This document shows, piece by piece, positions 6,290 through 61,350 of a DNA stretch of 64,000 nucleotides (positions are counted from its first letter, which is position 1; the number at the start of each line of letters is the position of its first letter). Where the stretch lies: IMG/VR virus record IMGVR_UViG_3300023083_000001, positions 194,358 to 258,357 of that record; one strand, written 5' to 3'. The notes below the pieces were generated by a model, which worked only from the letters and a program-made list of their open reading frames with translations, was not told the origin of the DNA and did no database searches. The position numbers were made by a program, and so were the translations under genes.

Positions 6290-6323
6290 CATACAGGGCG
6301 GGTTTCCCCGCCCTGGCTTTATG
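6290..6323. terminator. Hairpin between convergent genes (probable bidirectional terminator) with CATA/TATG flanks
   Basis: cagggcggg-tttc-cccgccctg (6294-6315). Confidence 0.7.
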
Positions 6324-7401
6324 CTGGAAGTTGACCAATTACCAGAATATCCAAACGTTCATTCAAGTACACCGCTTCGGCTGTTGTCAAGCCGTTACTC
6401 AGTGTCTTGTCTTCCTTAGACTGGATCAGGAAACGCTTGATAGCCGTGATCTCTTGCAATAGACGATCGTAGCCTGCGCGTTTACCAAACTCCAGTACCA
6501 CAGACGCCACTTCCATCTTCTGAGCAATCAGCGCCCAGATCACTTGGAAGGTCGGAGTCATCGAAGGAAACCCCACCGCTTGCAAGTAATTCTCACCGTA
6601 GACCGCTGGGATGCTGGAGAGGATCTGATTAGCCGTCATGGCTTTACCAGAGATCTTACTCACAGCGTCTGCAACAATCTCATCGGCGTGATGGTTGTTA
6701 TTGTTTTGCATGAAGGTCAAGTTCGTTCCTACAGGAGATGCGTACTTCAGACCCAACGCCACCTGCACCTTATTAAAGATCGCAACGTTCAAGTGACTCT
6801 TGAGTGCACCCACCAGAGGAACCGTAGTCAGGTATTCTTCCATGAGTTTACCAGGGTTAGCTGACTGCCACATCTTCCACTGAGCTGCCAGCAGAGGGAT
6901 GTCGATGTGAATGATCGCCAGACCTGGGTTCCTGATCACCATCTCGTTCTTCACACCCAGCTCAACGATGGTAGTATCACTCAGAGAGTGCTGGATGATT
7001 TCGATGGGGGTTACTGACTTCCAGTCACGCCACAGATCCATTGCAGTCCAGCGAGCACTCCTGGCGTAGACCACGATCTCTGGACACCCTGGATAGAAGT
7101 TACTGTCAGTAAAGATTCGACCTTTACTGAAGCTTGAGGTAATATCTAACGAGGAGCAGATATTCTTTGCGTTAACCTCAACCTTGGACATGTAGCTGAC
7201 AAGGTCGCCGTTGAACTCAACCGTGAGGGAGATCAGCAGCTTCATTAATAGGTGAGAACTGTCCAACCGTCCAGTCGATGTGGAACGCTGTTGGATCAGA
7301 CGCTGGTAGTTCAGATCGACCTGTTCTCTTAGGTAACCCATGCGGGCATACTGGAACGGCGAACGATCAGTAAAGTTGGAGGGGTTGAATAACTGATACA
7401 T
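6319..7401 (-). CDS. Conserved phiKZ-like protein, probably virion-associated (gp52-like position)
   Basis: 360 aa on the minus strand between the polymerase and chimallin genes; AGGGA SD. Confidence 0.7.
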   Translation of the reverse strand: MYQLFNPSNFTDRSPFQYARMGYLREQVDLNYQRLIQQRSTSTGRLDSSHLLMKLLISLTVEFNGDLVSYMSKVEVNAKNICSSLDITSSFSKGRIFTDSNFYPGCPEIVVYARSARWTAMDLWRDWKSVTPIEIIQHSLSDTTIVELGVKNEMVIRNPGLAIIHIDIPLLAAQWKMWQSANPGKLMEEYLTTVPLVGALKSHLNVAIFNKVQVALGLKYASPVGTNLTFMQNNNNHHADEIVADAVSKISGKAMTANQILSSIPAVYGENYLQAVGFPSMTPTFQVIWALIAQKMEVASVVLEFGKRAGYDRLLQEITAIKRFLIQSKEDKTLSNGLTTAEAVYLNERLDILVIGQLPA

Positions 7402-7569
7402 GTCCGTCCCTATTCGATGGTTATGTATAAAATTACGGAGGTACTACTATCTTATGTAATTAAACTTACAGCCTGCCTTCCAGCAGGTTATGCCGTAGTC
7501 TATTACCCAATCTGGTTTATTCATGGTATTGGCAGCGTAAAGAAAGTGGATCTAAAAAATCTACACTAA

Positions 7570-7585
7570 TACATTACCTACTTGA
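7570..7585 (+). promoter_or_regulatory. Putative early (virion RNAP) promoter
   Basis: TACATTAC-ctac-TTGA with an upstream A-tract; resembles the phiKZ early consensus TATATTAC; near-identical copy at 59847. Confidence 0.55.
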
Positions 7586-7769
7586 ATGAATACACTAGGT
7601 TGTTGAAGTTCGCCCGTTTAATACCCGGTGGTACGCCGGGGAGTCTAGGCCCGAGTGGCTCACGACGGTGGGTTATTCTTTACGGGAATCCCTGATGCGA
7701 TAGGGGTAACTGTACATCGGACAAATCCGTCCAGCAATCGCGAACATATGTTCCATTAAGGAGTGCTTC

Positions 7770-9749
7770 ATGAGCAATAACGACGATTTCCAAACACGTA
7801 GCGACAGCCAACCCGAGGGCCGTCAGCCACGCCAGGAATCCCAAAGCAACGACCGTGCACAAGCCCGCGACGAGCGCCCTCGTCAAAGCCAACGCAATGA
7901 CGGTGAGCAAGTGACTCTGGCTGACCTCGGTCGTCTGAACGCACGTCCTGGTGTCGGTGGTCTGTCTGACGCAGCTCTGGTAGCAATGATCGAAGCTTTC
8001 GACGGCGCCAAAGCGTTCGACAAGCCAAACGTTCCTGAAGCAGTAAGCCGCAAGCGTTTCCGCGTGCTGCCACTGGATCAGAGCACTGGCCGTACGTCAC
8101 TGTCCAGCCTCCTGGTCGTTCTGCCGACCGAAATCGCTGGCAAACTCTTCACCCTGGTTTACGTTCTGCTGATCGAACAGCCGGGCGGCCCAGGTCTGCG
8201 TACTCTGTCTGATCGTGGCGAGCAATTCGAAGCCCTGATCCTGCCAGAAGACGTGATGACCGATCGTTACATCACCGTCATCAAGAGCCAGGTTGCCAAC
8301 CTGCAAGACAACTCGAACATTCTGATCGTCGGTAGCCAAGTGCTGTTGTACAGCACCGTAGCCACCATCACCGAGAAAGAAGGTCAAGCTGCAATCGCCG
8401 CCGTCTACGACAACGCGCTCGACGCCATCTCCGGCTTCCGCGAAAACATCGTCGACGCACTGAGCGACAAACGCAACGACGGCATGCGTATCAACCCTGG
8501 CATGATTGCCCGGACTGACCGCCTGGAAGTGTCTTTCGATTACAGCGGCAAAACCATCTCCGACTCTTCGGGTCTGCCGGTGCGTTCTGACGTGACTTCT
8601 GCCCTGTACTACTCGGCAGCAGCCCCTGAAGAAGAAAACCTGTACTCCCGTACTCTGCTCGGCGAAGTCCGCGCTGGCCTGGACCTGTTCCTGACCGACG
8701 ACGGCGTCGATCGTACCATCCCAAGCTTCGGTTCGCGCCGTCGCCGCGCTGGTGGTCGTGATGAAGTGGATCAGCCATTCTGGCAGCCAGTGTTCAACAT
8801 CACTTCGATCAACTGCCCTGCTGGCATTCCGTTCTCGCTGGAACTGGCTCAGCTGTTGCTGGCCCAGGTAGCACTGCAATCCAACGACTATCGTTGGGCG
8901 AACGTGCTGCGTCCTCGTTCCACCATCGCCGGTGGTCTGAAGCCAGTCGCACAACTGTCGCACCTGCACCTGCTGAACCCGGACAAGGAAAAGGCCGCCG
9001 TCATCAACGACGTCAGCCAGAACATGTCCGATCCCGATCTGTACGACTTCCTCGACGTCACTGTCAAACCGGAAATCGTATTCGGCATGGCGATCCCTTC
9101 CAGCGGCGAGAAATCTTGGGTGCTCAGCATCTACGAGCGTATCGCACTGGCAGATCCGCGTGACGCCGAGAAACTGATCGACACCTTGTTCGCATCGGCC
9201 GACGTTCTGACCGGTGGTCGTTTCACGAAACTGTACGACGAACTCTCCAACGGCACCAACCCGTCGCCGGTTGCGGCATACGGCACTCGCGCCTTCACCG
9301 GCACCTGGACCGATACCGACGGCAACGTGCGTCCTCTGAGCGAATGGAACGTTCCGGCGGTCCTGACTTCGGTTGGCGTGAAGAACCCAGAGCTGGCTCA
9401 AGACTACCAGTACACCTTCGAAGACCGTCGTCACTCGGTCGACTACAGCTTGGCACAACGCAACGGCATCCTGTCGCGCATTGTTCCAGGTCTGCACATC
9501 GTCGGTACCTGTGAGCAACTGAGCTTCCACCCTTGGTACATCCAAGCGTTGTCTCTGGCCCTGGCTGATGCGAACATGGCATCGCTGCCAACCAGCGGTG
9601 ATGGCCTGCAACAGTCGCGTCGTGTGGGTAGCACCGACTTCTCGGCGTTCGCTACTGCGGATATCGGCTCTTCGCGCCGTCGTCCAAACGACACTGCTGA
9701 TCGTGGCCGTGGTCGCGATCGCTTCAATGGCGGTGGCAACTACTACTGA
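7770..9749 (+). CDS. chmA: Chimallin, phage nuclear shell protein (phiKZ gp54-like)
   Basis: 659 aa directly upstream of nvRNAP beta'-N; strong codon bias; AAGGAG SD; disordered termini; LELAQLLLAQ...RWANVLRP and FHPWYIQAL segments. Confidence 0.85.
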   Translation: MSNNDDFQTRSDSQPEGRQPRQESQSNDRAQARDERPRQSQRNDGEQVTLADLGRLNARPGVGGLSDAALVAMIEAFDGAKAFDKPNVPEAVSRKRFRVLPLDQSTGRTSLSSLLVVLPTEIAGKLFTLVYVLLIEQPGGPGLRTLSDRGEQFEALILPEDVMTDRYITVIKSQVANLQDNSNILIVGSQVLLYSTVATITEKEGQAAIAAVYDNALDAISGFRENIVDALSDKRNDGMRINPGMIARTDRLEVSFDYSGKTISDSSGLPVRSDVTSALYYSAAAPEEENLYSRTLLGEVRAGLDLFLTDDGVDRTIPSFGSRRRRAGGRDEVDQPFWQPVFNITSINCPAGIPFSLELAQLLLAQVALQSNDYRWANVLRPRSTIAGGLKPVAQLSHLHLLNPDKEKAAVINDVSQNMSDPDLYDFLDVTVKPEIVFGMAIPSSGEKSWVLSIYERIALADPRDAEKLIDTLFASADVLTGGRFTKLYDELSNGTNPSPVAAYGTRAFTGTWTDTDGNVRPLSEWNVPAVLTSVGVKNPELAQDYQYTFEDRRHSVDYSLAQRNGILSRIVPGLHIVGTCEQLSFHPWYIQALSLALADANMASLPTSGDGLQQSRRVGSTDFSAFATADIGSSRRRPNDTADRGRGRDRFNGGGNYY

Positions 9750-9777: not shown

Positions 9778-9815
9778 CAGGAGAGGGGTAATTCCCTCTC
9801 CTGCTTCTTTTTTTT
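9778..9815 (+). terminator. Intrinsic terminator after chmA
   Basis: caggagaggg-gtaatt-ccctctcctg followed by cttc and a T8 run. Confidence 0.8.
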
Positions 9816-11955: not shown

Positions 11956-11983
11956 TACAGCCCGGTGAAAGCCGGGCTGTATG
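11956..11983. repeat. Palindromic hairpin-family member
   Basis: tacagcccgg-tgaaag-ccgggctgta(tg); arms match those of the 31952 element. Confidence 0.8.
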
Positions 11984-12009
11984 CCCTATCGATCATTAGG
12001 AGATCAGGC

Positions 12010-14040: not shown

Positions 14041-14256
14041 ATGTCTGGGTGTGAAAGGTGTGTTGGGAAAATGAACATTCTCTTGAGGATTGGTGAGTTG
14101 TCCCACGAGAAAAGGCTGTCAGATGAACAGCACGAACCTTTTGTATTGTACGAAACGCGTATGAATGAGGAGAGTGTATTGGTTATCGAACCAATGTACG
14201 GAGACAGGCTTTCAGTAACGCTGATTGTAGGTAACACGCAAATCCGTACCGTCTAG
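14041..14256 (+). CDS. Accessory hypothetical protein with N-terminal CxxC
   Basis: ATG 14041 after AGGGGA; CERC. Confidence 0.6.
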   Translation: MSGCERCVGKMNILLRIGELSHEKRLSDEQHEPFVLYETRMNEESVLVIEPMYGDRLSVTLIVGNTQIRTV

Positions 14257-14259
14257 CAG

Positions 14260-14305
14260 CATACACCCCCAGGCGAAAGCCTGGGGGTGGTCTGTTCTTT
14301 TTTTT
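14260..14305 (+). terminator. Intrinsic terminator closing the accessory cassette
   Basis: CATA, then cacccccaggc-GAAA-gcctgggggtg, then a T8 run. Confidence 0.85.
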
Positions 14306-14347
14306 GTTTACGCAATCAGCATATCCTGTATAGAGCAGGAGTTTATA

Positions 14348-15233: not shown

Positions 15234-15758
15234 ATGTCGCAAAAACACATCGCTAAAGGCCGCAAGTTCCCGAAGACTTCGGATGAGCTGCACATGTTCA
15301 TCGCCGAATCCTTCCGCGACTTGCTGGCTGTTCCAGAAAACGGCGCGATCTTCGCTAACACAGTGCTTCACGCCCAACTGAGCGCACTGACCGCCAATCG
15401 TGAACACGAACAACGTGCGCAGACCGCGATCGTCCTGGTCAAGACCGAATACCCACAGTGCGTACGCGCTACAGTCACCGCGCCAGTCGTTGAAGGCGAG
15501 CTGCTGAGCGTTACCCTGGAAGTGCGTGACAACGGTCCTGAAAGCGACTGGGTCGACGCTGGCAAGCTCTACACCAAGGAAGCACTGGACAACGTCGGCA
15601 AGCTGGTTCTGTCCCAGACCGCCACACCAGGCGATCAGTGGTACGTGACCACCAACCACGCTGTCGATAAGGCGCGTGAGCAGGTCAGCCAGATGATGCT
15701 GGAACAAGCCGATGCACTGGCAGCAATGACGGCTGAAGCTCCAGCGTCCGTCAACTGA
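15234..15758 (+). CDS. Hypothetical protein
   Basis: 174 aa; AAGGA SD; strong codon bias. Confidence 0.8.
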   Translation: MSQKHIAKGRKFPKTSDELHMFIAESFRDLLAVPENGAIFANTVLHAQLSALTANREHEQRAQTAIVLVKTEYPQCVRATVTAPVVEGELLSVTLEVRDNGPESDWVDAGKLYTKEALDNVGKLVLSQTATPGDQWYVTTNHAVDKAREQVSQMMLEQADALAAMTAEAPASVN

Positions 15759-19403: not shown

Positions 19404-19446
19404 CCACACAGACACCGAACAGGGTCTGTGTGGTGGGGGTTTATGC
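19404..19446 (+). terminator. Hairpin after chmC with downstream TATG
   Basis: ccacacagac (19404-19413) / gtctgtgtgg (19424-19433). Confidence 0.6.
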
Positions 19447-19472
19447 CGCCTTAGTGTAAATCTTTACAACCA

Positions 19473-19488
19473 TACATCATAACTATGA
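19473..19488 (+). promoter_or_regulatory. Putative early promoter
   Basis: TACATCAT-aact-ATGA; same octamer as at 24412. Confidence 0.45.
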
Positions 19489-22759: not shown

Positions 22760-23986
22760 ATGTCAACTAAACTTGAAACACTACTGGACTTCGACACGAA
22801 AGTGTTGGGCGATGTCGGCGTGTTCGATAATGATGGCGGCGGCATGTTGTCTTATACTGGCCGGGATGGCAAGCCTAAGGCAGTGACCATCAGTGGTAAA
22901 CGTCTGGTTCTGCCTACTCAGCAGTTCCTGCGTGACGGCGACTGGGAGAAACGCATTGCGTGGCACCCACTGTCCGAACAGATCAACGAAGGTCCAAGCC
23001 CGGTCCTGAACGCCACCAAGAACTACATCACCGAACGGTTGAAACTGACCTTCCGTGAACTGGCTCTGGCGTTGATGGAACTGGCTGCTGAAGAAAAGCG
23101 CCACAAGGCATTGACCGCCAAAGCTGGTAAGTACCTGGTGACTTTGCCAGGCGCTGATCAGAAAGTAGTCGACACCCTGCGTAAGGTTCTGGACTCGGTC
23201 GGTGATGCGCCTGAGAAACGTTCGATTACCATGTTCCTCAAGAACGGCGGCAAGAACGGTGCTCTGCGTAGCTGCATGGTCAGCTTCCCAATCCTGGATG
23301 AATCTGAAACCGAAGTAGAAGATGGTGCAACCTTCTTCGGCGTGAAGATGCCTCGTAAGACTAAGGACAAGCAATTGATCCTGAGTCTGTTCGAATACAT
23401 CCTGGGCGACAAAGACTATCGCGAGACTTACACGCAGTCGTCTAGCAACAGCGATGCGCCGTACTTGCATTGCCTGCTGCTGTCGTTCCAAGTGTTGGCT
23501 GAGCGTTTCAACAAGCTGATCGAAGTTCACGTTGCGGCTTGTCCACAACTGTCGGGTTTCAAGTTCGGTTTGGGCTGGCTTGAAAACATGAACGACTTCG
23601 ACAACTTCGCAAAAGTCTACGGCGTGGCGGTTCCATCTCTTCCGGGTAACAGCGGCGTTACTGCCTCTGAACCTGAAGACTCCAGCAAAGACGTGTTCGA
23701 AGCCGATGCTGAAGATCTGGGCAAGGTTGCTATTGACCTGCCGTGGGATGAGCGTCCAGGTGACACTGGTCGTCGTGATTCACCGTCTCGCGATCGTCGA
23801 TCGGTAGAGCGTGAACCGGTGCGTCAGGAAGGTGTTCCAACTCGTAGCCTCAAGGACGTGTTGGGCGGCAGCCGTCGTAATGACGAACCAGACCGTGAGA
23901 CTCGCGGTAGCAGCTGGCGCAGCAGCGGTCGTGATGACCGTGGTGGCGGTGGACGTCCAAGCGGCCGTGGTGGTCGTAGCTGGTAA
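22760..23986 (+). CDS. Conserved core protein (phiKZ gp70-like)
   Basis: 408 aa after picA; IAWHPLSE segment; R/G-rich disordered tail. Confidence 0.72.
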   Translation: MSTKLETLLDFDTKVLGDVGVFDNDGGGMLSYTGRDGKPKAVTISGKRLVLPTQQFLRDGDWEKRIAWHPLSEQINEGPSPVLNATKNYITERLKLTFRELALALMELAAEEKRHKALTAKAGKYLVTLPGADQKVVDTLRKVLDSVGDAPEKRSITMFLKNGGKNGALRSCMVSFPILDESETEVEDGATFFGVKMPRKTKDKQLILSLFEYILGDKDYRETYTQSSSNSDAPYLHCLLLSFQVLAERFNKLIEVHVAACPQLSGFKFGLGWLENMNDFDNFAKVYGVAVPSLPGNSGVTASEPEDSSKDVFEADAEDLGKVAIDLPWDERPGDTGRRDSPSRDRRSVEREPVRQEGVPTRSLKDVLGGSRRNDEPDRETRGSSWRSSGRDDRGGGGRPSGRGGRSW

Positions 23987-23989
23987 CGG

Positions 23990-24031
23990 CATACATGGGC
24001 AGGGGTAAAACCCTGCCCATACTTGCTTTTT
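23990..24031. terminator. Terminator between convergent genes
   Basis: CATA, then atgggcaggg-gtaaaa-ccctgcccat, then a T-run. Confidence 0.75.
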
Positions 24032-24041
24032 AATTTGTGGC

Positions 24042-28618: not shown

Positions 28619-28634
28619 TACGCAGCATAGAGAG

Positions 28635-28661
28635 AGCCACCTTCACCGGTGGCTTTTTTTT
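28635..28661 (+). terminator. Intrinsic terminator
   Basis: agccacc-ttcacc-ggtggct followed by a T-run; CATA upstream. Confidence 0.75.
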
Positions 28662-28702
28662 CTACATATAGAGGGAATACTTTAACCAATTCACTAGGAG
28701 TA

Positions 28703-30230: not shown

Positions 30231-30250
30231 GCCGGGGAGAAATCCCCGGC
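30231..30250. terminator. Hairpin after the helicase gene
   Basis: gccgggga-GAAA-tccccggc followed by ctttattt. Confidence 0.65.
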
Positions 30251-30273
30251 CTTTATTTCCCTTAGGAGGGTAG

Positions 30274-31947: not shown

Positions 31948-31951
31948 ACAG

Positions 31952-31996
31952 CATACAGCCCGGCTCACGCCGGGCTGTATGTCACTTCTTTTTTTT
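31952..31996. repeat. Palindromic CATA-stem-TATG element / bidirectional terminator
   Basis: catacagcccggc-TCAC-gccgggctgtatg (13-bp perfect stem) followed by cttc and a T8 run; convergent junction. Confidence 0.88.
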
Positions 31997-32007
31997 GTAT
32001 CAAACCA

Positions 32008-38619: not shown

Positions 38620-38641
38620 CAGTGCGTGACGGAGCGAACAG

Positions 38642-38673
38642 CATACAGCCCCGGCTCAGGCCGGGGCTGTATG
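38642..38673. repeat. Palindromic CATA-stem-TATG element at a convergent junction
   Basis: catacagccccggc-TCAG-gccggggctgtatg (14-bp stem); near copy of the 31952 element; no U-tract. Confidence 0.88.
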
Positions 38674-38677
38674 TCGC

Positions 38678-43699: not shown

Positions 43700-43746
43700 C
43701 ATAAAGCCCCTACCCATGACCGGCACTCGCTAGTCATGGGTAGGGG
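43700..43746. terminator. Hairpin at a convergent junction
   Basis: CATA, then cccctacccatgac / gtcatgggtagggg (14-bp stem). Confidence 0.78.
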
Positions 43747-43756
43747 TCTATTACGT

Positions 43757-52002: not shown

Positions 52003-52023
52003 CGGTAGTTGCAACTGATTGAA

Positions 52024-52054
52024 CATATAGGCCGGGCTTGTCCCGGCTTATATG
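52024..52054. repeat. CATA-stem-TATG hairpin-family member
   Basis: catataggccggg-cttgt-cccggcttatatg. Confidence 0.8.
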
Positions 52055-52109
52055 CTGCTAGCGACTTTATCCTATGACCTAATAACCCTACAGCACAAAG
52101 GCGGCTTGT

Positions 52110-53276
52110 ATGGACAATGAATTACTGGATCAGGATCCGTTCCACGATCTAATACAAGCTGACAGTACCTTGAGTGCAAGCTTCGAGAATCTTCAGCGTG
52201 TGATGGACTCCTACACCGCGCTGGAAAGCTTCATGCAAGCAGGTGAATCTCTGCCCTCATTCGAGTCTGTATCGCGCCCAATGATCGCAGCTATCCTGGG
52301 TGGTACCGATTACGATGTAGACGATCTCGACGTCAGCGTCGAGTCAGTACGCGGGATGGTAGGTTCAGCTGTTAAAGCAATCCTTGCAGCCTTGCAGAAC
52401 TTCTTCAAGTCCCTGTTCTCTTTTCTGAGCAGTATGGACTTGGCGGCTTCCTGGCTGATGCGCAAAGTTGTTCTCCTGGAACGGCAGGTGGCGTCGAGCC
52501 GTGGTAAAGTGGCTCAGCAAGAACGCGTAACTCTGGGGCGTCAGTACAAGTACTTGCGTGTGGGTAAAGTCTTTGCTGAAGATTCCCTGCGTCTTGAAAC
52601 TGAACTGAAGAACCTGCTCGGTGTGATCAATGTGATTAACACTGAATATTTGAACTCCGTTCTTAAGGTTGCTGAACGTCTGCCTGCTGCTGTACGTGGC
52701 AAGACTTCAGATGCCTTAGTCACCGAGTTGGTAGGTTTGATCCGTGGTGTCCCTTTCGATGGACTGGCTTCGAAGATGGGGATGTCCGATGTTCCCTACG
52801 AACGCTTCAGTCGTAAGAACGTGCAAGCCACCAGTCCATTGCTGGGCGGGAAAAGCTTGTTCTACCTTAAGTCTGATTTGGATGCTAAAGGTGTGCGAGG
52901 TTTCAGGTTCCATGGTTTCAGTTATGACACCACGGGACGGGACGTAGGTCGTGTAGAAGCAACGCATGACTTCAACACCCTGTCACCTGCACAGATCGGC
53001 AACATCCCAACGGTGGTGCGTGAGATCCTACAACAGATCTCCAAAGGTGCTAACGCCAGTACCCGCAGCCAGATCACGCGTACACAACGCACGTTGGATA
53101 ACTTCGTCAAGGCTCAAGAGTCTTCGGCAGGTGGTGATGTGGACGCTATCCGTAAAACTGTATCAACTCTCACTTATTGGATGTCTTCTCCATCCAGAGC
53201 CCTTTTCATTGACTCGATGTCGGTCTGTCGAGCAGTGGTTCTTTATTGCAACGCGTCCATTCGAACCTACAGGTGA
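52110..53276 (+). CDS. Internal head protein paralog
   Basis: 388 aa; SFE/ALE/SVE sites, then amphipathic LQNFFKSLFSFL. Confidence 0.78.
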   Translation: MDNELLDQDPFHDLIQADSTLSASFENLQRVMDSYTALESFMQAGESLPSFESVSRPMIAAILGGTDYDVDDLDVSVESVRGMVGSAVKAILAALQNFFKSLFSFLSSMDLAASWLMRKVVLLERQVASSRGKVAQQERVTLGRQYKYLRVGKVFAEDSLRLETELKNLLGVINVINTEYLNSVLKVAERLPAAVRGKTSDALVTELVGLIRGVPFDGLASKMGMSDVPYERFSRKNVQATSPLLGGKSLFYLKSDLDAKGVRGFRFHGFSYDTTGRDVGRVEATHDFNTLSPAQIGNIPTVVREILQQISKGANASTRSQITRTQRTLDNFVKAQESSAGGDVDAIRKTVSTLTYWMSSPSRALFIDSMSVCRAVVLYCNASIRTYR

Positions 53277-53279
53277 ATC

Positions 53280-54575
53280 ATGTCTCAATTTAAACAACAG
53301 TACCAAGAAGCACTCAAAGGCGGAGCAAGCCTGGAGTCCGCTGAGATTGCCGGTATGGCTGCAATGCCTGTCGACAGTAGCGAGTGGACTCAGGACGACG
53401 TTGAAGACATGCTGGAAGATCGTGACAGCGTTATTGTATCTGATGATGCCGTCACCGACCTGGCTGCCGATGGTAAGTTCCTGGCCGCATCGTCTGCCGT
53501 CACCAACGTGGTAGGTCAGGCTGCAACGGCTGCTGAAACCATGCCACCTGCTGTAGCCGAAGCGTTTGTCGATCAAGCCAACTGTGTGATCAACGATGCG
53601 TCGAAAGTGATTGGTTCGCCGATCCCTAACCTCAAGTGTGACGAAGATGGTTTCGTCAACAACGCGTCGATGGAAGGTCTGTCCGATTGGTTCGGTACTG
53701 CTGCCCGTGCATTCAAAGCTTCCACCGGTCAGTTCTTTGGCCGCATCGCTTTGACGTTCACTCGTCTGAACGAAAGCTCCAAGGGTTTGCTCAACCGCTG
53801 CTCACGCATCCGTAGCAAAATCAAGTCCCGTAAGGGTGCAGGCGGTAAGGCGCTGAAGATCAGCTCCAGCGATCTGCGTTACCTGATCCTGGGTGATGGC
53901 TACGTCAACAACCCGATCGCAGCGTTGAATGAGTTCAGTGCGCTGAGTCTTTCGGTCAGTCAAGTCGTCGAGCAGTATTTTGACCGTGTGGACAAGATCC
54001 TCAAGGCCAAGATCTTCGATGCGTTGGCTAATGCCTCGGGTAACCGTTCGGTGTTCACCAATATCGAGACGTCTGACCTGCTCAAGCAACTGACTGACAT
54101 TATCAGCAAACAACCAGCACTGAGCCTGGGTAATGTGAAGTATGCAGTCAGTAAGATCGACTCGTCCAAAATCATCGGCGTGACCTTGCAAGACCAAACC
54201 CCACTGGCCGAACAGCTGGTCAAGCATCTGGACCCTATCCAGTCGCTGACCAATGAAGAAGTCATGGAATGGGTCAAAGGTCTGGAAGACTTGATCAACG
54301 CTCAAATGACGCGTCTGGAGAAGATCACCGACCGCACCAGCCGTTCGTTCGACAATGTACGCTCCACGCTCGAGAAGCTGAACTACACCGGCGGTGACAA
54401 AGATGAGCCGCTGCTGGCTGACGATGTCGACGTCATCGAACTGTTGCGTTTGGAAAATCAGATGGTCAGCGAAGTCGGCGCTATCTGCGAACGTCTTGCC
54501 AGCTACCAGCAAGACCTGGTCAACCGTCTCGACTCGGCGTTGGTCGTTGTAGAAGAATCCCTCTTCCAGGACTGA
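53280..54575 (+). CDS. Internal head protein paralog
   Basis: 431 aa; SLE and SME sites, then GLSDWFGTAARAF. Confidence 0.78.
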   Translation: MSQFKQQYQEALKGGASLESAEIAGMAAMPVDSSEWTQDDVEDMLEDRDSVIVSDDAVTDLAADGKFLAASSAVTNVVGQAATAAETMPPAVAEAFVDQANCVINDASKVIGSPIPNLKCDEDGFVNNASMEGLSDWFGTAARAFKASTGQFFGRIALTFTRLNESSKGLLNRCSRIRSKIKSRKGAGGKALKISSSDLRYLILGDGYVNNPIAALNEFSALSLSVSQVVEQYFDRVDKILKAKIFDALANASGNRSVFTNIETSDLLKQLTDIISKQPALSLGNVKYAVSKIDSSKIIGVTLQDQTPLAEQLVKHLDPIQSLTNEEVMEWVKGLEDLINAQMTRLEKITDRTSRSFDNVRSTLEKLNYTGGDKDEPLLADDVDVIELLRLENQMVSEVGAICERLASYQQDLVNRLDSALVVVEESLFQD

Positions 54576-54580
54576 TCAGA

Positions 54581-54623
54581 CATAAGGCCTGCACGCAGAG
54601 GGTACTGCCCTCTGCGTGTTATG
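54581..54623. terminator. Hairpin with CATAA/TTATG flanks
   Basis: cacgcagaggg-tactg-ccctctgcgtg. Confidence 0.72.
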
Positions 54624-54652
54624 CCGCCACCTGACAATAGGTAGATCATCCA

Positions 54653-56407
54653 ATGCCGCGAATTACAGTCAAACTCGCGTCCAGTTACGAGAACATCTCA
54701 AGACCTGTGTGTATGGGTCTGGCTCGGGATGTAATGGTGCTGTGCGACATCGACGAGAAGACACCTGTGTTCATGCCAGGTGAGTTTGAACAAGTCAATC
54801 AACCCAACACTGAAATGGGTGGATCGGGCGAAGCTATCTTTGAAAGCTTTGAACGCATCATCGTGGTAGCCGAAGACAACATGCGTCAAGAGTCTGTTCT
54901 GAATCAGGTTGTACGTCAGAACGAACTCCCACCCATGTTGGAAGATAACCGACTGGGGATCAGTGTACGTCCCGTCTACATGCAGTCGGACATCACGTTG
55001 TCGTTCCGCTACATCTGTAGTACACGTCAGCAGGCTATCAAGTGGCGCGATGAGTTCGCTGCAAGGCGGGCTGAGAACCGTACCAGCGTCTCCCATGAGA
55101 TCAGCTACAAGATCCCAGTGCAGGATGGCGTCATTGGTCTATTGGCACATTTGCATCATCTGCGTGAAAAGACGGCAGGGTATGGTGAAACGTTCAACGA
55201 GTATTTTAGAAGTATCCAGAAGCGTGAGTTCATTGGACTGGGTACTCAGGATGGGGACATTGATAAACTCCTCATCGCTGTTCCTGAGAAACAAGTGGAA
55301 GTCACAGGGTGGTTTGATTTCAACGAGATCCCCAAGGAAACCAAGATCAGTGGTAACTCAACGTGGGAGATTCAATTCACCTACCGTCTGATGTACCACC
55401 GTGCCACTCACTTGTACATTTCCTATCCGTTGATGGTTCACCAGAGTCATATCTCGAAAACCTACTTCTCATCTCGTCCTCGGTATTGCATTGAGGAGTT
55501 GAACAAGAACGGGGCCATTGGGATCAAGGCACTGGATGCAATCGATGGTCAGTACAACCACTTCCCGGCACCAGCGGACGGGATGCGGATTCCAGCTTAC
55601 GATGAGTGGATTCCACAACCTCGTTCACAACCGCCCATGAGCGTCTCAGCAATCTCGTGGATGATTCAGCTCAATCCTAAAGATTCTCAGGATATCTTGA
55701 ACCTGACCCAGCTTCCAGACATGCGTCTGACTCTGGAGATGGACACGTACCTGAAGGTCATCTACAAGACGCTGCACAAACGTGGTGGTGGGTTGTGCTT
55801 CCTGACGCTGTACGCCAACGACATGCCGCTCGATGAAGCATTCCTCACGGTGGACAAGGATCTGAACGTACGGGCGACTGTACCTTTGGATTTACGTAAA
55901 CAATACCACCTGCGTCTGAACTTTCCAACAGCTTACATGCTGTTCAATAAAGCGACGATCAGGTTGATGCAAACACACAACAAAGCAACGTTGCAAACAT
56001 TTCAATCCATCCTACCTTCACTTGATGTCGAATACGCATTGTCTCTTCTGATCGGTGGGTTGTATCTACCGGAAGCTTATATCGCCTGGTTCTACAAATA
56101 CCTGGAAGATCACGGGACAGGTTTTGCACCGGGTACAGGTGGTATTGGCGAACATGTCAATACAGGTTCTGGTGAAGGTGGTGGGTTACCTCAAGGTGGT
56201 GGTGTAAGTGGTATCGGTGGACCAGGTAGTGGGAACAACAGCGGTGGGAACGGTAATGGTCCGACAGGTCCTGGCAACGGTGGTCAGAGTGGCGGGGATG
56301 GTAGCGCTCCTACACCTGCTGAGTGGACAAAGCCCGTTTGGCAGCGACGTGGTACCAATGGTAACCATTGGGTCCAATGGCTGATCATTGCGACAGCCAA
56401 TCGTTAA
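54653..56407 (+). CDS. Virion neck/tail-terminator-like protein with Gly-rich insertion
   Basis: 584 aa in the structural cluster; G/N/S/P-rich segment near the C-terminus; fold assignment tentative. Confidence 0.55.
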   Translation: MPRITVKLASSYENISRPVCMGLARDVMVLCDIDEKTPVFMPGEFEQVNQPNTEMGGSGEAIFESFERIIVVAEDNMRQESVLNQVVRQNELPPMLEDNRLGISVRPVYMQSDITLSFRYICSTRQQAIKWRDEFAARRAENRTSVSHEISYKIPVQDGVIGLLAHLHHLREKTAGYGETFNEYFRSIQKREFIGLGTQDGDIDKLLIAVPEKQVEVTGWFDFNEIPKETKISGNSTWEIQFTYRLMYHRATHLYISYPLMVHQSHISKTYFSSRPRYCIEELNKNGAIGIKALDAIDGQYNHFPAPADGMRIPAYDEWIPQPRSQPPMSVSAISWMIQLNPKDSQDILNLTQLPDMRLTLEMDTYLKVIYKTLHKRGGGLCFLTLYANDMPLDEAFLTVDKDLNVRATVPLDLRKQYHLRLNFPTAYMLFNKATIRLMQTHNKATLQTFQSILPSLDVEYALSLLIGGLYLPEAYIAWFYKYLEDHGTGFAPGTGGIGEHVNTGSGEGGGLPQGGGVSGIGGPGSGNNSGGNGNGPTGPGNGGQSGGDGSAPTPAEWTKPVWQRRGTNGNHWVQWLIIATANR

Positions 56408-56410
56408 CGG

Positions 56411-56441
56411 CATACGGCGGGGAGTGATCCCCGCCTTTAAT
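56411..56441 (+). terminator. Hairpin terminator
   Basis: CATA, then ggcgggga-GTGA-tccccgcc, then tttaatttt. Confidence 0.7.
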
Positions 56442-56457
56442 TTTGAGAGGTCTCGTT

Positions 56458-57813
56458 ATGCCAGTGGTAACCGAACCAGAAGACGAAAAGAAGTTTCTTG
56501 AACCCAACCTCATCATTGCTCCTGAAGATTACCAAACGCCAGTAGTCGATACACGCAAAGTTGATTACGACGGACTGTCGACTTACATCGGCGGGATGAA
56601 GTGGGCAAACGACTATTACTCGCAGATCCAAGGACGTGACAGCGCTGCGGCATCCTTTCAAGATGACCTCCCCGCACCGTTTGGTCAGTATCGTGAGATC
56701 CGTGGTTTCGAGATTGTCGTTACCTCAGAACTCAGCGGTGGTCAGAACTCAGAAGACGCCCGTGGCTTTACCAAGGTCGGCGCTGGCTTGGTGTACAGCA
56801 TCATCACTCCACAAGTGGGTGACGTGTTCATCGCTGACGTAGGTAATGGCAAGAACGCGGCATTGCAGATCACCAGCAGCACACGTCAGAGTATCTTTCC
56901 AGAATCACCATCGGTGGTTGAATACCGCATCACACGTTTTGTCGACGAGAAATTCCTCAAAGCGTTGAAGGGCCGCGTCCAGCAGACGTTCTACTTCATC
57001 AAACAAAACTTTCGCAATGGCGTTAAGTGTCTGTTGACCGAAGAAGAAGTCAACATCACTCAGGATCTGGGGGAGTCGTATTTCCGCTTGATGAACCTGT
57101 ATCTGCATGACTTCTTCTCGGAACGTTACCACACGTTGTTAGTACCGGGACAGAATACAGCAACCTACGATCCGGCAGCTGTCAGGTTTGTTCGCAGTAT
57201 CTTGGCGTCTGGCGATCATCGGCTGGTGATGCAGATTACCGAACTGGGTGTGTCGCACGATGTATTTTCTAAAGAATTTACCTTATTCGATGCAATCAAA
57301 AACCGTGATGCCAACTTGCTGTACAGTTGCTCCAAGAAGATGGCGTTGAGTTCAGTGGCTGCGTATCGCACGTATCCCTGGATGGCAAGCATCTACTACA
57401 GCGGTATCAAACAGATCGTCAGTCCTGTCGATGTCGGGTTCAGCGTCAACCACGAGAACCACATTCCTCACGCCTCCATCGGTTTCGAGAAAGCGCAAGT
57501 GGGACATCGTGATATCGATTCTATCCTGCCTCAGCTGGGATTGGTCGAAGAAGAAGATCGTCCAGAATACGGTCGTTACATCCACCGCATCACCAAGGAC
57601 GATTACTACGTCTTCAGCGAAGCGTTCTACAAAGACACCGAAGGGAAGTCCATGCTCGAAACCATGGTCCTCGAACGTCTGCGTGGTCGGGCGATCAACT
57701 TGGGTGATCTGGCTGAGATGGCTAATTACGCGGTGAAGTTCGATAACCTGGAACGGTACTACTACATTCCAATTATCCTCACCCTCATCAAACTGGCTTC
57801 AGGAGTTCTGTAA
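56458..57813 (+). CDS. Virion protein, possibly T4 gp14-like neck/head-closure protein
   Basis: PQVGDVFIADVG...LQIT resembles the P..GD.I..P....F.I pattern; GAGAGG SD. Confidence 0.55.
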   Translation: MPVVTEPEDEKKFLEPNLIIAPEDYQTPVVDTRKVDYDGLSTYIGGMKWANDYYSQIQGRDSAAASFQDDLPAPFGQYREIRGFEIVVTSELSGGQNSEDARGFTKVGAGLVYSIITPQVGDVFIADVGNGKNAALQITSSTRQSIFPESPSVVEYRITRFVDEKFLKALKGRVQQTFYFIKQNFRNGVKCLLTEEEVNITQDLGESYFRLMNLYLHDFFSERYHTLLVPGQNTATYDPAAVRFVRSILASGDHRLVMQITELGVSHDVFSKEFTLFDAIKNRDANLLYSCSKKMALSSVAAYRTYPWMASIYYSGIKQIVSPVDVGFSVNHENHIPHASIGFEKAQVGHRDIDSILPQLGLVEEEDRPEYGRYIHRITKDDYYVFSEAFYKDTEGKSMLETMVLERLRGRAINLGDLAEMANYAVKFDNLERYYYIPIILTLIKLASGVL

Positions 57814-57814
57814 C

Positions 57815-58426
57815 GTGCAAACTACCTCGTTGACCCAATCCGGTTACCGTCTCAAACCCAAAGATAATAAGCGGCGGTCAACGGCGTACTACATCTTCGA
57901 TCCCGAAGCGACACACATCTTCGAGATTGATCATGCACACTTCGTTGCGCTGAACAAACGCTTCAACGTCCCTATCGTCACTACCGGTGTCGCGGGTGAC
58001 ATGGAACGTATCGCTGCTGAGATGGTCAGTACCAGCGGGACAATCTGGAAGATGGTGGAGCTGTTCGTTGATGGCGCTACCCTATCTATCCCAGATACAG
58101 CGACCGCCGCTGTGATCTATAGGCGTATCCTGGATCACTTCGACCATCACTTCACATTGATGAAGACGGACAAGATGTACCACGCCCCACCTGCTGAAGA
58201 CTTCCGGGCGATGGGTGAATTCGCCACCGCTATCCGTCCGTGGGCCTTGCAAAGTAATCCTGAGATCGAACAGGTCCAGGGCCACAAGATGCAAAAGTTC
58301 CTTCCGATCCGAGCGACGTTCAGTCAAGCGACTGTGGCGATGGTCAAGAAGGAAGATGTCATTCCGAAGAGTGTCAAGCTGATGGACAACATCGAGCGGT
58401 ATCTGGAGATGCAAAATGGCGGTTGA
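57815..58426 (+). CDS. Conserved hypothetical protein
   Basis: 203 aa; GTG start after AGGAG; coupled to the next gene. Confidence 0.75.
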   Translation: MQTTSLTQSGYRLKPKDNKRRSTAYYIFDPEATHIFEIDHAHFVALNKRFNVPIVTTGVAGDMERIAAEMVSTSGTIWKMVELFVDGATLSIPDTATAAVIYRRILDHFDHHFTLMKTDKMYHAPPAEDFRAMGEFATAIRPWALQSNPEIEQVQGHKMQKFLPIRATFSQATVAMVKKEDVIPKSVKLMDNIERYLEMQNGG

Positions 58427-59831: not shown

Positions 59832-59846
59832 AGATTTATTGAGTGC

Positions 59847-59862
59847 TACATTACTCTCTTGA
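59847..59862 (+). promoter_or_regulatory. Putative early promoter
   Basis: TACATTAC-tctc-TTGA; matches 7570-7585 at 12 positions. Confidence 0.55.
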
Positions 59863-59871
59863 CTAGACAGG

Positions 59872-59890
59872 CTGGAGGACACCCCTCCAG
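59872..59890. terminator. Intergenic hairpin
   Basis: ctggagg-acacc-cctccag. Confidence 0.5.
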
Positions 59891-59936: not shown

Positions 59937-60590
59937 ATGAGCAGTACACTCTCTCCCGATGCACCTGTAGTGGAACAGGGTAAGCTTCTCAACATGATCA
60001 TGCATCAGGGCATGGACAAGATGACGCACAAGCAGTTCATCGTCCTGAAAACGTTTGATTATGGTGATTTGCTCGAAGAGATTCGTTCACAAGGCCACAT
60101 CAAGAGCGAGGATGTGTTTGTAAGGCTCTACAACGTGCTTATGGAACGCGAGATCATCGAACCTATCCAATCATGCATCTTGGATATAGGTGTCCATGGT
60201 CGAAGCTCCAAGGCCGTCCAGGAACATTACCGGCATAAGCTCAACAGTAACAGCAGTCTGATGAAAACCCTGATACATGAACTGGAGAAGATCCTGTTCA
60301 CGTTTGATGGACCAGAAGGTGAAATCCATCTTCTTAAATCAGGCGGCGTTGAGACGCTAGGTCATGTGCTTGTGAGTCTGGAAGATGGTACCGGCATTTA
60401 TGCCAGCACGACGTTGGATCTTATCGGCCCAGGTGCGTCGGACTTCCCTGATTTATTTGAGGAGGAAATCAAACAGGCCCTGCACGGATACTTAGTTGAC
60501 AATCATCCAGGCTTGTCGATTAGCATGGACATCAAGATAAGGAGGTCTGAACTAGCGTTAGCTACTGGAGATTTCTTATGCTCGATGTAA
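59937..60590 (+). CDS. Hypothetical protein
   Basis: 217 aa; AAGGG SD. Confidence 0.75.
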   Translation: MSSTLSPDAPVVEQGKLLNMIMHQGMDKMTHKQFIVLKTFDYGDLLEEIRSQGHIKSEDVFVRLYNVLMEREIIEPIQSCILDIGVHGRSSKAVQEHYRHKLNSNSSLMKTLIHELEKILFTFDGPEGEIHLLKSGGVETLGHVLVSLEDGTGIYASTTLDLIGPGASDFPDLFEEEIKQALHGYLVDNHPGLSISMDIKIRRSELALATGDFLCSM

Positions 60591-60859
60591 CTGTCCTTGT
60601 GCAAGACGTCCAAACCGTACTCCAACGCAAAGATCCTCATGCGGCTGTTCTGATTACCTTGCTCGTTAGTGAGCACCTGTCAGAAATCCCAGCCGAAGAC
60701 ATCGTTTCAGAATTCAACAACCACCACATCGACGCAAGAGTTGGTCAGTATCACCTCTTTCTTTCTATTGAGGGATCACGGCTACGCATTCCTTTACGTC
60801 CCTTACTTCAAGGTGACAAACATGAGCTACCGATTAAAAAGCATCACAAAACCCGCTGA
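60578..60859 (+). CDS. Small hypothetical protein
   Basis: 93 aa; GGAG SD; overlaps both neighbours. Confidence 0.65.
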   Translation: MLDVTVLVQDVQTVLQRKDPHAAVLITLLVSEHLSEIPAEDIVSEFNNHHIDARVGQYHLFLSIEGSRLRIPLRPLLQGDKHELPIKKHHKTR

Positions 60860-61301
60860 ACGTCAATCCATTCTAACCACCCTCGCCATTGCTGCGATGA
60901 TCCACCAAACCAATGAGGCTGTACAAGAAACTGCAAAACACCTGATGCGTGATGCATCGATATCGTTGGTCAAGTCTCTGCTCAAACCTCTGTCTGAAAG
61001 TCACAATGCCCTAGACATTGTGATCGATGAAGTGGTCTATCCGATTGAAGAGAAGATCCTCGGTCGGGTAACGCTGGATAACTACACCTACGACATCGTC
61101 ATTACGTGGCGAGGCATTCTGGATTACACCACTGATCAGATTGCATTACTCACCGCTGGCAGGTTTATTCAGCGAGGTCTGATAGTGGGCCGGATCTACA
61201 TGACAATGATTCACCCTGTGTATCGTCATGAGTATTCGACCAGTTTGGATCTGGCTGAAGTATCACGGTTCTCGCGTGCGGATATTGAGCATGCGGCATA
61301 G
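60822..61301 (+). CDS. Hypothetical protein (MSYRLKSITK...)
   Basis: ATG 60822 after AAGGTG; frame open from 60669. Confidence 0.7.
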   Translation: MSYRLKSITKPAERQSILTTLAIAAMIHQTNEAVQETAKHLMRDASISLVKSLLKPLSESHNALDIVIDEVVYPIEEKILGRVTLDNYTYDIVITWRGILDYTTDQIALLTAGRFIQRGLIVGRIYMTMIHPVYRHEYSTSLDLAEVSRFSRADIEHAA

Positions 61302-61305
61302 ACGA

Positions 61306-61350
61306 CATATAGCCCGGCGTGAGCCGGGCTATATGCTGCTTCTTTTTTTT
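61306..61350. repeat. Palindromic CATA-stem-TATG element / bidirectional terminator
   Basis: catatagcccggc-GTGA-gccgggctatatg followed by cttc and a T8 run; inverted copy of 31952 with one compensatory base-pair change. Confidence 0.88.

What the first reader, a model, noticed from the sequence alone, without database searches (positions are those of the whole stretch)
6290..61350. Family of palindromic CATA-stem-TATG hairpins at gene junctions, with covariation
Seen: hairpins at 3335, 6290, 11956, 14260, 23990, 28625, 31952, 38642, 43700, 52024, 54581, 56411 and 61306 repeatedly begin with (G/A)CATA and often end in TATG. Several share the arms CAGCCCGG/CCGGGCTG. 31952 and 61306 are inverted copies differing by one compensatory C-G to T-A pair. 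Loops favour GNRA on one strand (GAAA, GTGA, or the complements TTTC, TCAC). Many copies lack a U-tract (6290, 38642, 43700, 52024, 54581). Established: TATG is the phiKZ nvRNAP late-promoter core. Inference: sequence conservation beyond what a terminator needs suggests a dual terminator/promoter, or a protein-read mRNA 3'-end, processing or export signal relevant to a nucleus-forming phage.
Basis: partly seen in the sequence, partly recalled or inferred. Interest (0 to 1): 0.68.

Follow-up and report, generated by a model that had tools for sequence, protein, structure and literature searches.

The report
Phage terminator hairpins with TATG tails
The hairpins are real: they are this uncultivated nucleus-forming jumbo phage's version of the conserved gene-end terminator module already described in phiKZ and 201phi2-1, a GC-rich hairpin followed by TATGYYG, often with the same word mirrored on the other side; placement looks like a transcription stop signal, not a promoter.

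Summary
Observation confirmed and extended. The window is the last 64 kb of a 258-kb chimallivirus-like contig from leaf litter. Genome-wide, 33 of 73 strong intergenic hairpins carry CATA in the 5' flank and 35 carry TATG in the 3' flank. Shuffled flanks give about 5 and 4, and the wrong orientation gives 2 and 3. The full motif is hairpin, 0-4 nt, then TATG-Y-Y-G(T). This matches the published phiKZ terminator consensus, which ends in TTATKYYGT. The 5' CATA is the same word on the other strand (ACRRCATA, usually abutting the stop codon). I found the same mirrored layout in phiKZ, in 201phi2-1 and in uncultivated relatives. Strong hairpins occupy 19 of 22 convergent junctions, 52 of 236 co-directional junctions and 1 of 22 divergent junctions. 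This is terminator-like placement, not promoter-like. Loops are GNRA or UNCG on the sense strand 17 times against 1. Orthologous junctions keep the flanks but replace the stems. Best reading: direction-specific phiKZ-type terminators, bidirectional when palindromic. Two things are unexplained. About a third of co-directional junctions carry an antisense-facing tail. The tail is not U-rich here, so it may be read by the phage polymerase. No RNA data exist for this phage. It is a new member of a known kind.

The parts
1575..1612 (+). Probable element: 10-bp hairpin (1575-1602), then GTC and TATGCTG (1606-1612). It lies at the start of a called ORF whose 5' end may be over-extended.
3336..3401 (+). 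Co-directional junction. CATA (3336-3339) directly after stop TGA, an imperfect long hairpin, TATG (3382-3385), then T8 (3394-3401).
6286..6326 (.). Convergent junction. ACGGCATA (6286-6293), 9-bp hairpin 6294-6315, TATGCTG (6320-6326); no T-tract. Mirrored tails, so a putative bidirectional terminator.
9778..9815 (+). Hairpin after the chimallin gene, followed by CTTCTTTTTTTT. Canonical T-tract class with no CATA or TATG.
11956..11986 (+). Co-directional junction. 10-bp hairpin with CAGCCCGG arms and a sense tail TATGCCC (11980-11986); no 5' CATA.
14256..14306 (.). Co-directional junction. GCAGCATA (14256-14263; the antisense-facing tail), 11-bp hairpin with GAAA loop, and a sense tail TTCTTTTTTTTG (14295-14306).
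19404..19448 (+). Hairpin with a 10-nt loop, then a sense tail TATGCCG (19442-19448). The promoter-like CATACATC at 19471 follows 22 nt after the end of the tail.
23986..24037 (.). Convergent with the small minus-strand gene 24042-24386. ACGGCATA (23986-23993), 10-bp hairpin, then a T-rich tail. The 5' word is kept in relatives L001 and L002 although their stem is different.
28622..28662 (.). After the second RNA polymerase beta-like gene. GCAGCATA (28622-28629), hairpin 28635-28654, then T7.
30231..30260 (+). 8-bp hairpin with GAAA loop, then CTTTATTTCC (a TATT variant of the tail). The orthologue in L001/L002 has CTTATGTT.
31948..31997 (.). Convergent junction. ACAGCATA, a 13-bp perfect palindrome (31952-31981) containing CATA and TATG, then TTCTTTTTTTTG (31986-31997).
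38638..38676 (.). Convergent junction. ACAGCATA, a 14-bp palindrome (38642-38673), tail TATGTCG (38670-38676); no T-tract.
43700..43755 (.). Convergent junction. CATA (43700-43703), a 14-bp stem (43707-43720 with 43733-43746) around a 12-nt loop, and a degenerate tail TCTATTACG.
52024..52057 (.). Co-directional junction. A palindrome that starts with CATA and ends with TATGCTG (52051-52057); no T-tract.
54581..54626 (.). Co-directional junction. CATA (54581-54584), 11-bp hairpin 54592-54618, tail TATGCCG (54620-54626). TATGCCGCCA and the ribosome-binding site are kept in relative L017, whose stem is different.
56407..56444 (.). Co-directional junction. ACGGCATA overlaps the stop codon (56407-56414), then an 8-bp hairpin with GTGA loop and a U-rich tail TTTAATTTT. 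The L017 orthologue instead has TATGCCGTC and T8 on the 3' side.
61293..61351 (.). Convergent junction (the minus-strand gene 61359-62606 is conserved in L017). Tandem 5' words GCGGCATA and ACGACATA, a 13-bp palindrome 61306-61335, TATGCTG (61332-61338), then TTCTTTTTTTTG.

Best explanation
These are the phage's transcription-terminator (mRNA 3'-end) modules, of the type described for phiKZ. Each is a GC-rich RNA hairpin placed right after the stop codon, followed within 0-4 nt by the word TATG-Y-Y-G(T). Each tail serves transcripts that leave the hairpin in its own direction. CATA on the 5' side is the same tail on the opposite strand, so the CATA-stem-TATG palindromes are bidirectional terminators. 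A second tail, TTCTTTTTTTTG, is the ordinary U-tract alternative and is used only in the sense direction. Shown here: the motif, its polarity, its coupling to hairpins, its placement by junction type, the sense-strand loop bias, and its conservation from phiKZ to this phage. Inferred: that RNA 3' ends form here in this phage, by analogy with mapped phiKZ and 201phi2-1 3' ends. Also inferred: because the tail is not U-rich at 51% GC, it probably acts as a sequence-specific signal, perhaps a pause read by the phage non-virion polymerase, whose beta-like subunit binds single-stranded non-template TATG at promoters.
For: (1) Enrichment and polarity. CATA 5' occurs in 33 of 73 and TATG 3' in 35 of 73 hairpins, against 4.9 and 4.1 in shuffles; the wrong orientation occurs 2 and 3 times. 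Of 51 intergenic TATGYYG words, 45 follow a hairpin. (2) The tail profile GGSTnTATGYYGnWW (n=41) matches the phiKZ terminator consensus ...GGBYTTATKYYGT, which was derived from mapped RNA 3' ends (PMC10914365). 201phi2-1 has a similar motif A (n=59) and a co-occurring motif B that lengthens the hairpin (PMC11512511). (3) The same mirrored layout appears in phiKZ (9 CATA and 10 TATG in 20 hairpins per 50 kb), in 201phi2-1 (5 and 8 of 9) and in distant IMG/VR chimalliviruses. (4) Placement. Strong hairpins occupy 19 of 22 convergent, 52 of 236 co-directional and 1 of 22 divergent junctions. Sense exits carry a tail 81% of the time at convergent junctions (29 TATG plus 5 T-only of 42) and 71% at co-directional junctions (23 plus 18 of 58). 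(5) Tetraloops are GNRA or UNCG on the sense strand 17 times against 1 (p=1.4e-4), so the hairpin is tuned to fold in sense RNA. (6) Orthologous junctions in relatives with 42-70% amino-acid identity keep the flanking words and replace the stems with fully paired alternatives. (7) phiKZ gives the same exit proportions with curated annotation: 6 of 8, 8 of 17 and 6 of 17. (8) GP123 of phiKZ nvRNAP binds non-template TATG (PMC12809450). This phage has a homologue (28% identity) that keeps 4 of the 7 named pocket residues.
Against: No RNA data exist for this phage, so no 3' end is shown here. Twenty of 58 antisense-facing exits at co-directional junctions carry a TATG tail but none carries a T-tract. 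A plain 'stop antisense RNA' need does not explain why only this tail is used. These copies are also no closer to opposite-strand genes than other junctions are. In phiKZ only 4 antisense RNAs with a defined start, and few antisense terminators, were reported. At one orthologous junction the word is on the 5' side here and on the 3' side in the relative, which hints at a side-independent role. A stable UAUGCCGU hybrid is not what canonical intrinsic termination uses. The polymerase-read pause idea is pure inference.
Confidence: 0.6

Rival explanations
1. Dual stop-start junction: the hairpin ends the upstream transcript, and the adjacent TATG is a non-virion-polymerase promoter (G as +1) that starts the next one. 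Mirrored copies would then be antisense promoters.
For: TATG with G as +1 is necessary for phiKZ late promoters and is read in the non-template strand. At co-directional junctions the sense tail lies 18-90 nt upstream of the next start codon, with a ribosome-binding site between them. TATGCCGCCA plus the leader is conserved between this phage and L017 at window 54620. AR9 late promoters drive some antisense RNAs.
Against: The tails are commonest at convergent exits (29 of 42), where no gene follows, and absent at divergent junctions, where promoters must lie. TATGYYG without a hairpin is rare in intergenic DNA (6 of 51). P119L has no hairpin and no YYG. Only 4 antisense RNAs with a defined start are reported in phiKZ. 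Fixed 0-4 nt spacing to the hairpin is not a promoter requirement.
Confidence: 0.15
2. RNA-level protein recognition: the hairpin plus its flanks is a 3'-end mark read by a phage protein for processing, stability or export from the phage nucleus, in the manner of the histone mRNA stem-loop and its binding protein.
For: The flanks are conserved in sequence while stems vary. Loops are tuned for sense RNA. The tail is not U-rich. Transcription and translation are separated in these phages (general knowledge of chimalliviruses).
Against: The 5' and 3' words are reverse complements, so they differ as RNA (ACGGCAUA against UAUGCCGU). One RNA-binding site would not read both, yet either can occur alone. 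No candidate protein was identified or tested. The published phiKZ and 201phi2-1 data are interpreted as termination, and 201phi2-1 elements terminate in a reporter without phage proteins.
Confidence: 0.1
3. DNA-level element: a palindromic site for a dimeric DNA-binding or roadblock protein, or a repeated cassette that spreads or recombines between junctions, like the promoter-stem-loop cassettes of T4-type phages.
For: The motif has two-fold symmetry. Near-identical arms (CATACAGCCCCGGC) occur at eight or more junctions, sometimes with inverted loops. The motif switches sides between orthologous junctions. Repeated regulatory cassettes drive gene shuffling in T4-type phages (PMC2839356).
Against: Stem sequences are very diverse overall. 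The strong sense-strand bias of stable tetraloops (17 against 1) points to RNA folding, not duplex DNA. Half of the elements carry the motif on one side only. No insertion or deletion polymorphism was seen between strains.
Confidence: 0.07
4. Chance or composition: CATA and TATG are just AT-rich stem bases typical of intergenic DNA.
For: Intergenic DNA is richer in AT words.
Against: Enrichment is 7-8 fold over shuffled flanks. The wrong orientation occurs 2-3 times against 33-35. The extended word ACRRCATA / TATGYYGT is conserved across phages.
Confidence: 0.01

Closest known systems
Conserved intrinsic-terminator motif of phiKZ (Putzeys et al. 2024, PMC10914365): BCCYCCCCHWWDGGGRRGGBYTTATKYYGT, 61 copies at mapped RNA 3' ends
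   Same: A GC-rich hairpin at gene ends, followed at fixed short spacing by (Y)T-TATG/T-YYG-T. Dozens of copies per genome, in a chimallivirus with two phage polymerases. My scan of phiKZ 100-150 kb also shows the mirrored 5' word ACRRCATAA next to stop codons.
   Different: The stem consensus differs (CCYCCCC in phiKZ; diverse here, with a CAGCCC(C)GG subfamily). At 51% GC the tail is clearly not U-rich. A separate TTCTTTTTTTTG tail class exists here. The published consensus stops at the stem and does not state the 5' mirrored word. No RNA ends are mapped in this phage.
201phi2-1 terminator motifs A and B (PMC11512511)
   Same: Motif A (n=59) resembles the phiKZ motif. Motif B co-occurs with it (21 cases) and lengthens the hairpin, which is what a CATA...TATG extension does. 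My scan of 201phi2-1 150-190 kb finds CATA 5' in 5 and TATG 3' in 8 of 9 intergenic hairpins.
   Different: I could not see the motif logos (figures and tables are not held), so the identity of motif B with the 5' word is inferred. The authors interpret the long stems as resistance to antitermination.
phiKZ nvRNAP late promoter core TATG (PMC4666361; PMC12809450)
   Same: The same four-letter word. It is read as single-stranded non-template DNA by a core beta-like subunit whose homologue this phage encodes.
   Different: Promoters need no hairpin (P119L has none) and lie upstream of genes, including at divergent junctions. The hairpin-coupled word here is placed like a terminator and extends to YYG(T).
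Canonical bacterial intrinsic and bidirectional terminators
   Same: A GC-rich hairpin with a GNRA or UUCG loop just after the stop codon. A T-tract class is present (18 T-only sense exits at co-directional junctions). Palindromic forms sit at convergent genes.
   Different: About half of the tails are TATGYYG rather than a U-tract. Antisense-facing tails are never A/T-tracts (0 of 58).
PeSL promoter-stem-loop cassettes of T4-type phages (PMC2839356)
   Same: Repeated, sequence-conserved regulatory cassettes at gene junctions of a large phage genome.
   Different: No evidence here for mobility or for gene shuffling at the elements. The sequence and the polymerase system differ.

Membership tests
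phiKZ-type conserved terminator module | GC-rich hairpin in the 3' untranslated region, close to the stop codon | tested here: met
   Hairpins start 4-29 nt after stop codons. Occupancy is 19 of 22 convergent, 52 of 236 co-directional and 1 of 22 divergent junctions.
phiKZ-type conserved terminator module | Tail (Y)TTATKYYGT at fixed short distance 3' of the stem | tested here: met
   The profile is GGSTnTATGYYGnWW. TATG starts inside the stem (-4) or 0-4 nt after it in most cases.
phiKZ-type conserved terminator module | Many copies spread over a chimallivirus genome that encodes phiKZ-type polymerases | tested here: met
   45 hairpin-coupled TATGYYG words lie in intergenic DNA. Chimallin and RNA polymerase beta-like genes are present, as is a gp123 homologue.
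phiKZ-type conserved terminator module | RNA 3' ends map at the tail | not testable with these tools
   Only DNA metagenome runs hold this phage. The published TTS tables are not held.
nvRNAP late promoter (TATG, G = +1) | Located upstream of genes, including at divergent junctions; not expected between convergent genes | tested here: not met
   Hairpin-coupled TATG occurs at 29 of 42 convergent exits and 0 of 2 divergent exits. Only 2 hairpin-free TATGYYG words lie at divergent junctions.
nvRNAP late promoter (TATG, G = +1) | Primary transcripts start at the G | not testable with these tools
   No RNA data.
Canonical intrinsic terminator | Hairpin immediately followed by a U-tract | tested here: inconclusive
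   Met for the T-tract class (for example window 9778, 14264, 28635). Not met for TATG-only tails (window 6290, 38642, 52024, 54581).
Any Rfam family | Match at gathering score | tested here: not met
   No matches in the window.

The most novel reading that the evidence does not exclude
Chimallivirus polymerases may use one word, TATG, read in the non-template strand by a core beta-like subunit, both to start (bare TATG) and to stop (TATG-YYG directly behind an RNA hairpin). The tail would be a polymerase-read pause or release signal that replaces the U-tract. The mirrored copies at about a third of co-directional junctions would insulate genes from pervasive antisense transcription by a polymerase with only four bases of promoter specificity.
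Probability: 0.22. Interest if true: 0.7.

Novelty: new member of a known kind. Interest (0 to 1): 0.42.

Why it matters
This shows that the sequence-conserved terminator module of phiKZ-like phages extends to a distant, uncultivated leaf-litter phage whose proteins are under 40% identical to those of known phages. The module is therefore a family-wide trait, and it helps to annotate operon ends in metagenomic jumbo phages. Because this genome is 51% GC, it separates two readings that are confounded in AT-rich phiKZ: the tail is a specific word, not merely a weak U-tract. The analysis also makes two things explicit across three or more phages. The same word is mirrored on the 5' side, abutting the stop codon. 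The word contains the late-promoter core. Both are directly testable with the purified phiKZ polymerase and with existing phiKZ and 201phi2-1 long-read transcriptomes.

Tried and rejected
DNA searches of the phage collection found no near or distant nucleotide relative.

No RNA run holds the phage. Laying contigs of two related strains on window 52000-57900 gave 41 SNPs but none inside the elements at 52024 and 56411. That is uninformative for covariation, because only about one SNP was expected there.

Rfam gave no match.

The published TSS and TTS tables for phiKZ and 201phi2-1 are not held as text, and Ceyssens 2014 is not held. The direct test of starts and ends at the tails in phiKZ could therefore not be run.

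Idea rejected for lack of support: T-tract tails end early (virion-polymerase) operons and TATG tails end late ones.
- The first terminator after 11 putative early promoters is TATG in 5 cases, a T-tract in 4, and has neither tail in 2.
- Upstream gene length differs only as a trend (162 against 238 aa, p=0.14).

Idea rejected: antisense-facing tails are back-up stops for read-through from nearby opposite-strand genes (p=0.22, and in the wrong direction).

My first length-based gene calls mis-assigned some junctions, for example window 61306. I replaced them with codon-usage calls and a homology check; the conclusions did not change.

I did not build a covariance model or run R-scape-type covariation on the paralogous copies. 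The copies were found by their pairing, so covariation would be circular. I used motif-anchored tests, orientation controls and orthologous junctions instead.

The large protein searches were not needed.
Full report
WHAT THE WINDOW IS
The window is the last 64 kb (194358-258357) of a single 258,357-bp contig assembled from a leaf-litter metagenome. The contig encodes a chimallin-type nuclear shell protein (window 7770-9749), phiKZ-type RNA polymerase beta-like subunits (24454-28618) and split DNA polymerase genes. Its best protein matches, all under 40% identity, are to Xanthomonas, Burkholderia, Ralstonia and Pseudomonas jumbo phages. No nucleotide-level relative exists in the phage collection.

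All 13 listed sites fold into stable hairpins.
- Twelve carry CATA at or just before the stem, and eight carry TATG at or just after it.
- Small corrections: 11956 lacks CATA, and 43700 ends in TATT, not TATG.
- The 'TATG' downstream of 56411 contains the start codon of the next gene.

Genome-wide, perfect stems of 8 bp or more number 112, against 17-33 in shuffled genomes. Among 73 strong intergenic hairpins, CATA lies in the 5' flank of 33 and TATG in the 3' flank of 35.
- Flank shuffles give 4.9 and 4.1 on average, and never more than 13 and 12 in 2000 trials.
- The wrong orientation (TATG 5', CATA 3') occurs 2 and 3 times.
- Hairpin-free intergenic DNA has the words in 4-5% of windows.
- Hairpins inside genes lack the words.

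Anchoring on the word instead of the hairpin gives the same picture. Of 51 intergenic TATGYYG words, 45 sit directly behind a stable hairpin.

WHAT THE MOTIF REALLY IS
Aligned on TATG, the tail reads GGSTnTATG-Y-Y-G-n-W-W. TATG lies either inside the stem base (the palindromic copies) or 0-4 nt after it. The 5' word is its exact reverse complement, ACRRCATA (ACGGCATA, GCAGCATA, ACAGCATA). It usually begins at, or within a few bases of, the stop codon. The element is thus a hairpin with one or two copies of a single word, and each copy reads TATG... away from the hairpin on its own strand. A second tail class, TTCTTTTTTTTG(T), is also strongly stereotyped.

THIS MOTIF IS ALREADY KNOWN IN PHIKZ-LIKE PHAGES
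Long-read mapping of RNA 3' ends in phiKZ defined a conserved terminator motif in 61 terminators: a hairpin followed by BYTTATKYYGT (PMC10914365). 201phi2-1 has a similar motif A (59 copies). It also has a motif B that co-occurs with A and lengthens the hairpin (PMC11512511). The tail found here is the same word.

I checked both phages directly.
- In phiKZ 100-150 kb, 9 of 20 intergenic hairpins have CATA 5' (as ACRRCATAA next to TAA stops) and 10 have TATG 3'.
- In 201phi2-1 150-190 kb the figures are 5 and 8 of 9.
- Twelve more distant IMG/VR chimallivirus loci show the words at roughly a quarter to a third of hairpins.

The mirrored layout is therefore family-wide. The published phiKZ consensus does not include the 5' word.

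TERMINATOR OR PROMOTER?
TATG is the late-promoter core of the phiKZ non-virion polymerase, with G as +1 (PMC4666361). [quoted passage not shown]

Placement, however, is terminator-like. With codon-usage-based gene calls, strong hairpins occupy 19 of 22 convergent junctions, 52 of 236 co-directional junctions and 1 of 22 divergent junctions.

I then counted each side of a hairpin as an 'exit':

| Exit type | n | TATG tail | T-tract only |
|---|---|---|---|
| Sense, convergent junction | 42 | 29 | 5 |
| Sense, co-directional junction | 58 | 23 | 18 |
| Antisense-facing, co-directional junction | 58 | 20 | 0 |
| Divergent junction | 2 | 0 | 0 |

A gene end thus has some tail in 81% and 71% of cases whatever lies beyond it. 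Promoter-only positions have none. The validated phiKZ promoter P119L, at a divergent junction, has TATG but no hairpin. phiKZ with curated annotation gives the same proportions: 6 of 8, 8 of 17 and 6 of 17.

THE HAIRPIN WORKS AS SENSE RNA
At co-directional junctions, 17 of 25 tetraloops are GNRA or UNCG on the sense strand and only one on the antisense strand (p=1.4e-4). This argues against a purely duplex-DNA or cruciform role.

EVOLUTION AT ORTHOLOGOUS JUNCTIONS
The relatives are Ga0256785_1000002 (L017) and IMG/VR contigs (L001, L002, L018), with 42-70% amino-acid identity in flanking genes. They keep the words while replacing the stems with different, fully paired sequences.
- At window 23986, taACGGCATA is kept with a new stem.
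- At window 54620, TATGCCGCCA and the ribosome-binding site are kept.
- At window 61293-61351, the tandem GCGGCATA/ACGACATA, TATGCTG and the T-tract are all kept.
- At window 56407 the word is 5' here but 3' (TATGCCGTC plus T8) in L017.
- At window 19442 the relative has TGTG in place of TATG, so conservation is strong but not absolute.

Two closely related strains in other leaf-litter samples show no change inside the two covered elements. That result is not informative either way.

MECHANISM: WHAT IS SHOWN AND WHAT IS INFERRED
Shown: a hairpin-coupled, polar, family-conserved word with terminator-like placement and sense-RNA hairpins.

Inferred by analogy with mapped phiKZ and 201phi2-1 ends: transcripts end here.

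Further inference: at 51% GC the tail (UAUGCCGU) is not a weak U-rich hybrid, so it probably acts through sequence recognition. An attractive candidate is the polymerase's own non-template TATG pocket, acting as a pause. This phage's GP123 homologue (contig 103360-105060) keeps 4 of the 7 named pocket residues at 28% identity.

WHAT REMAINS UNEXPLAINED
Why do about a third of co-directional junctions carry an antisense-facing TATG tail, never an A/T-tract? The feature is shared with phiKZ, yet few antisense RNAs are reported there. These copies are not nearer to opposite-strand genes. Tail type does not track putative early promoters or gene size. Pervasive antisense initiation by a polymerase with a four-base promoter is a plausible cause, and AR9 shows late antisense promoters. 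It remains untested.

VERDICT
The feature is real and highly non-random. It is the local form of a published terminator module, so it is a new member of a known kind. The dual terminator/promoter idea is not supported as the main role but is not excluded at co-directional junctions. The protein-read or export idea has no evidence either way.

Noticed in passing
window 19471-19478 and 24410-24417; nine more copies elsewhere in the contig (positions 7234, 17970, 43146, 54649, 64005, 102177, 135317, 169574, 191029): A second conserved intergenic motif, roughly TTTAC-(N)-CATACATTAC, with 11 intergenic copies, all on the + strand and all upstream of genes. It is conserved in relatives L001 and L002. 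It resembles the one-strand, AT-rich early (virion-polymerase) promoters of phiKZ and is probably this phage's early promoter.
   Followed up: partly
window 14295-14306, 31986-31997, 61340-61351: The T-tract tails are themselves stereotyped (TTCTTTTTTTTG, often preceded by CAC and followed by T). They start 5-12 nt after the stem, farther than in textbook intrinsic terminators. The same form occurs in relatives L001, L002 and L017.
   Followed up: partly
window 61293-61309; contig 107889-107905; L017 16956-16975: Two 5' words stand in tandem (GCGGCATA then ACGACATA) before one hairpin, so the opposite strand carries a double tail. The arrangement is conserved in the relative.
   Followed up: partly
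contig 130305-130368 (outside the window), a divergent junction: The inverse arrangement, TATG-hairpin-CATA, with the words reading into the hairpin. It may be a pair of divergent promoters around a small palindrome.
   Followed up: no
window 59850-59890; L017 about 15500-15566: A promoter-like ACATTAC followed by a hairpin inside the leader of the next gene, at the same junction in both phages. It may be a 5' UTR structure or an attenuator.
   Followed up: no
window 52049 (loose end of an X1 contig, table 7): The source sample also holds a more divergent relative (about 88% identical over 85 nt). Its copy of the 52024 element keeps the ATATAG stem base but has a different GC core, so this is another stem replacement.
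   Followed up: no
window 7770-9749, 24454-28618, 3454-5616, 41888-43699: Gene content: chimallin (nuclear shell protein), two adjacent RNA polymerase beta-like subunit genes, and two separate DNA polymerase-like genes.
   Followed up: partly
contig 103360-105060 (outside the window): A homologue of phiKZ gp123, the polymerase subunit that binds TATG: 28% identity, with Ser144, Ser330, Ser334 and Gln466 equivalents kept. Asn186, Asn398 and Ser402 are not kept in a simple pairwise alignment.
   Followed up: partly
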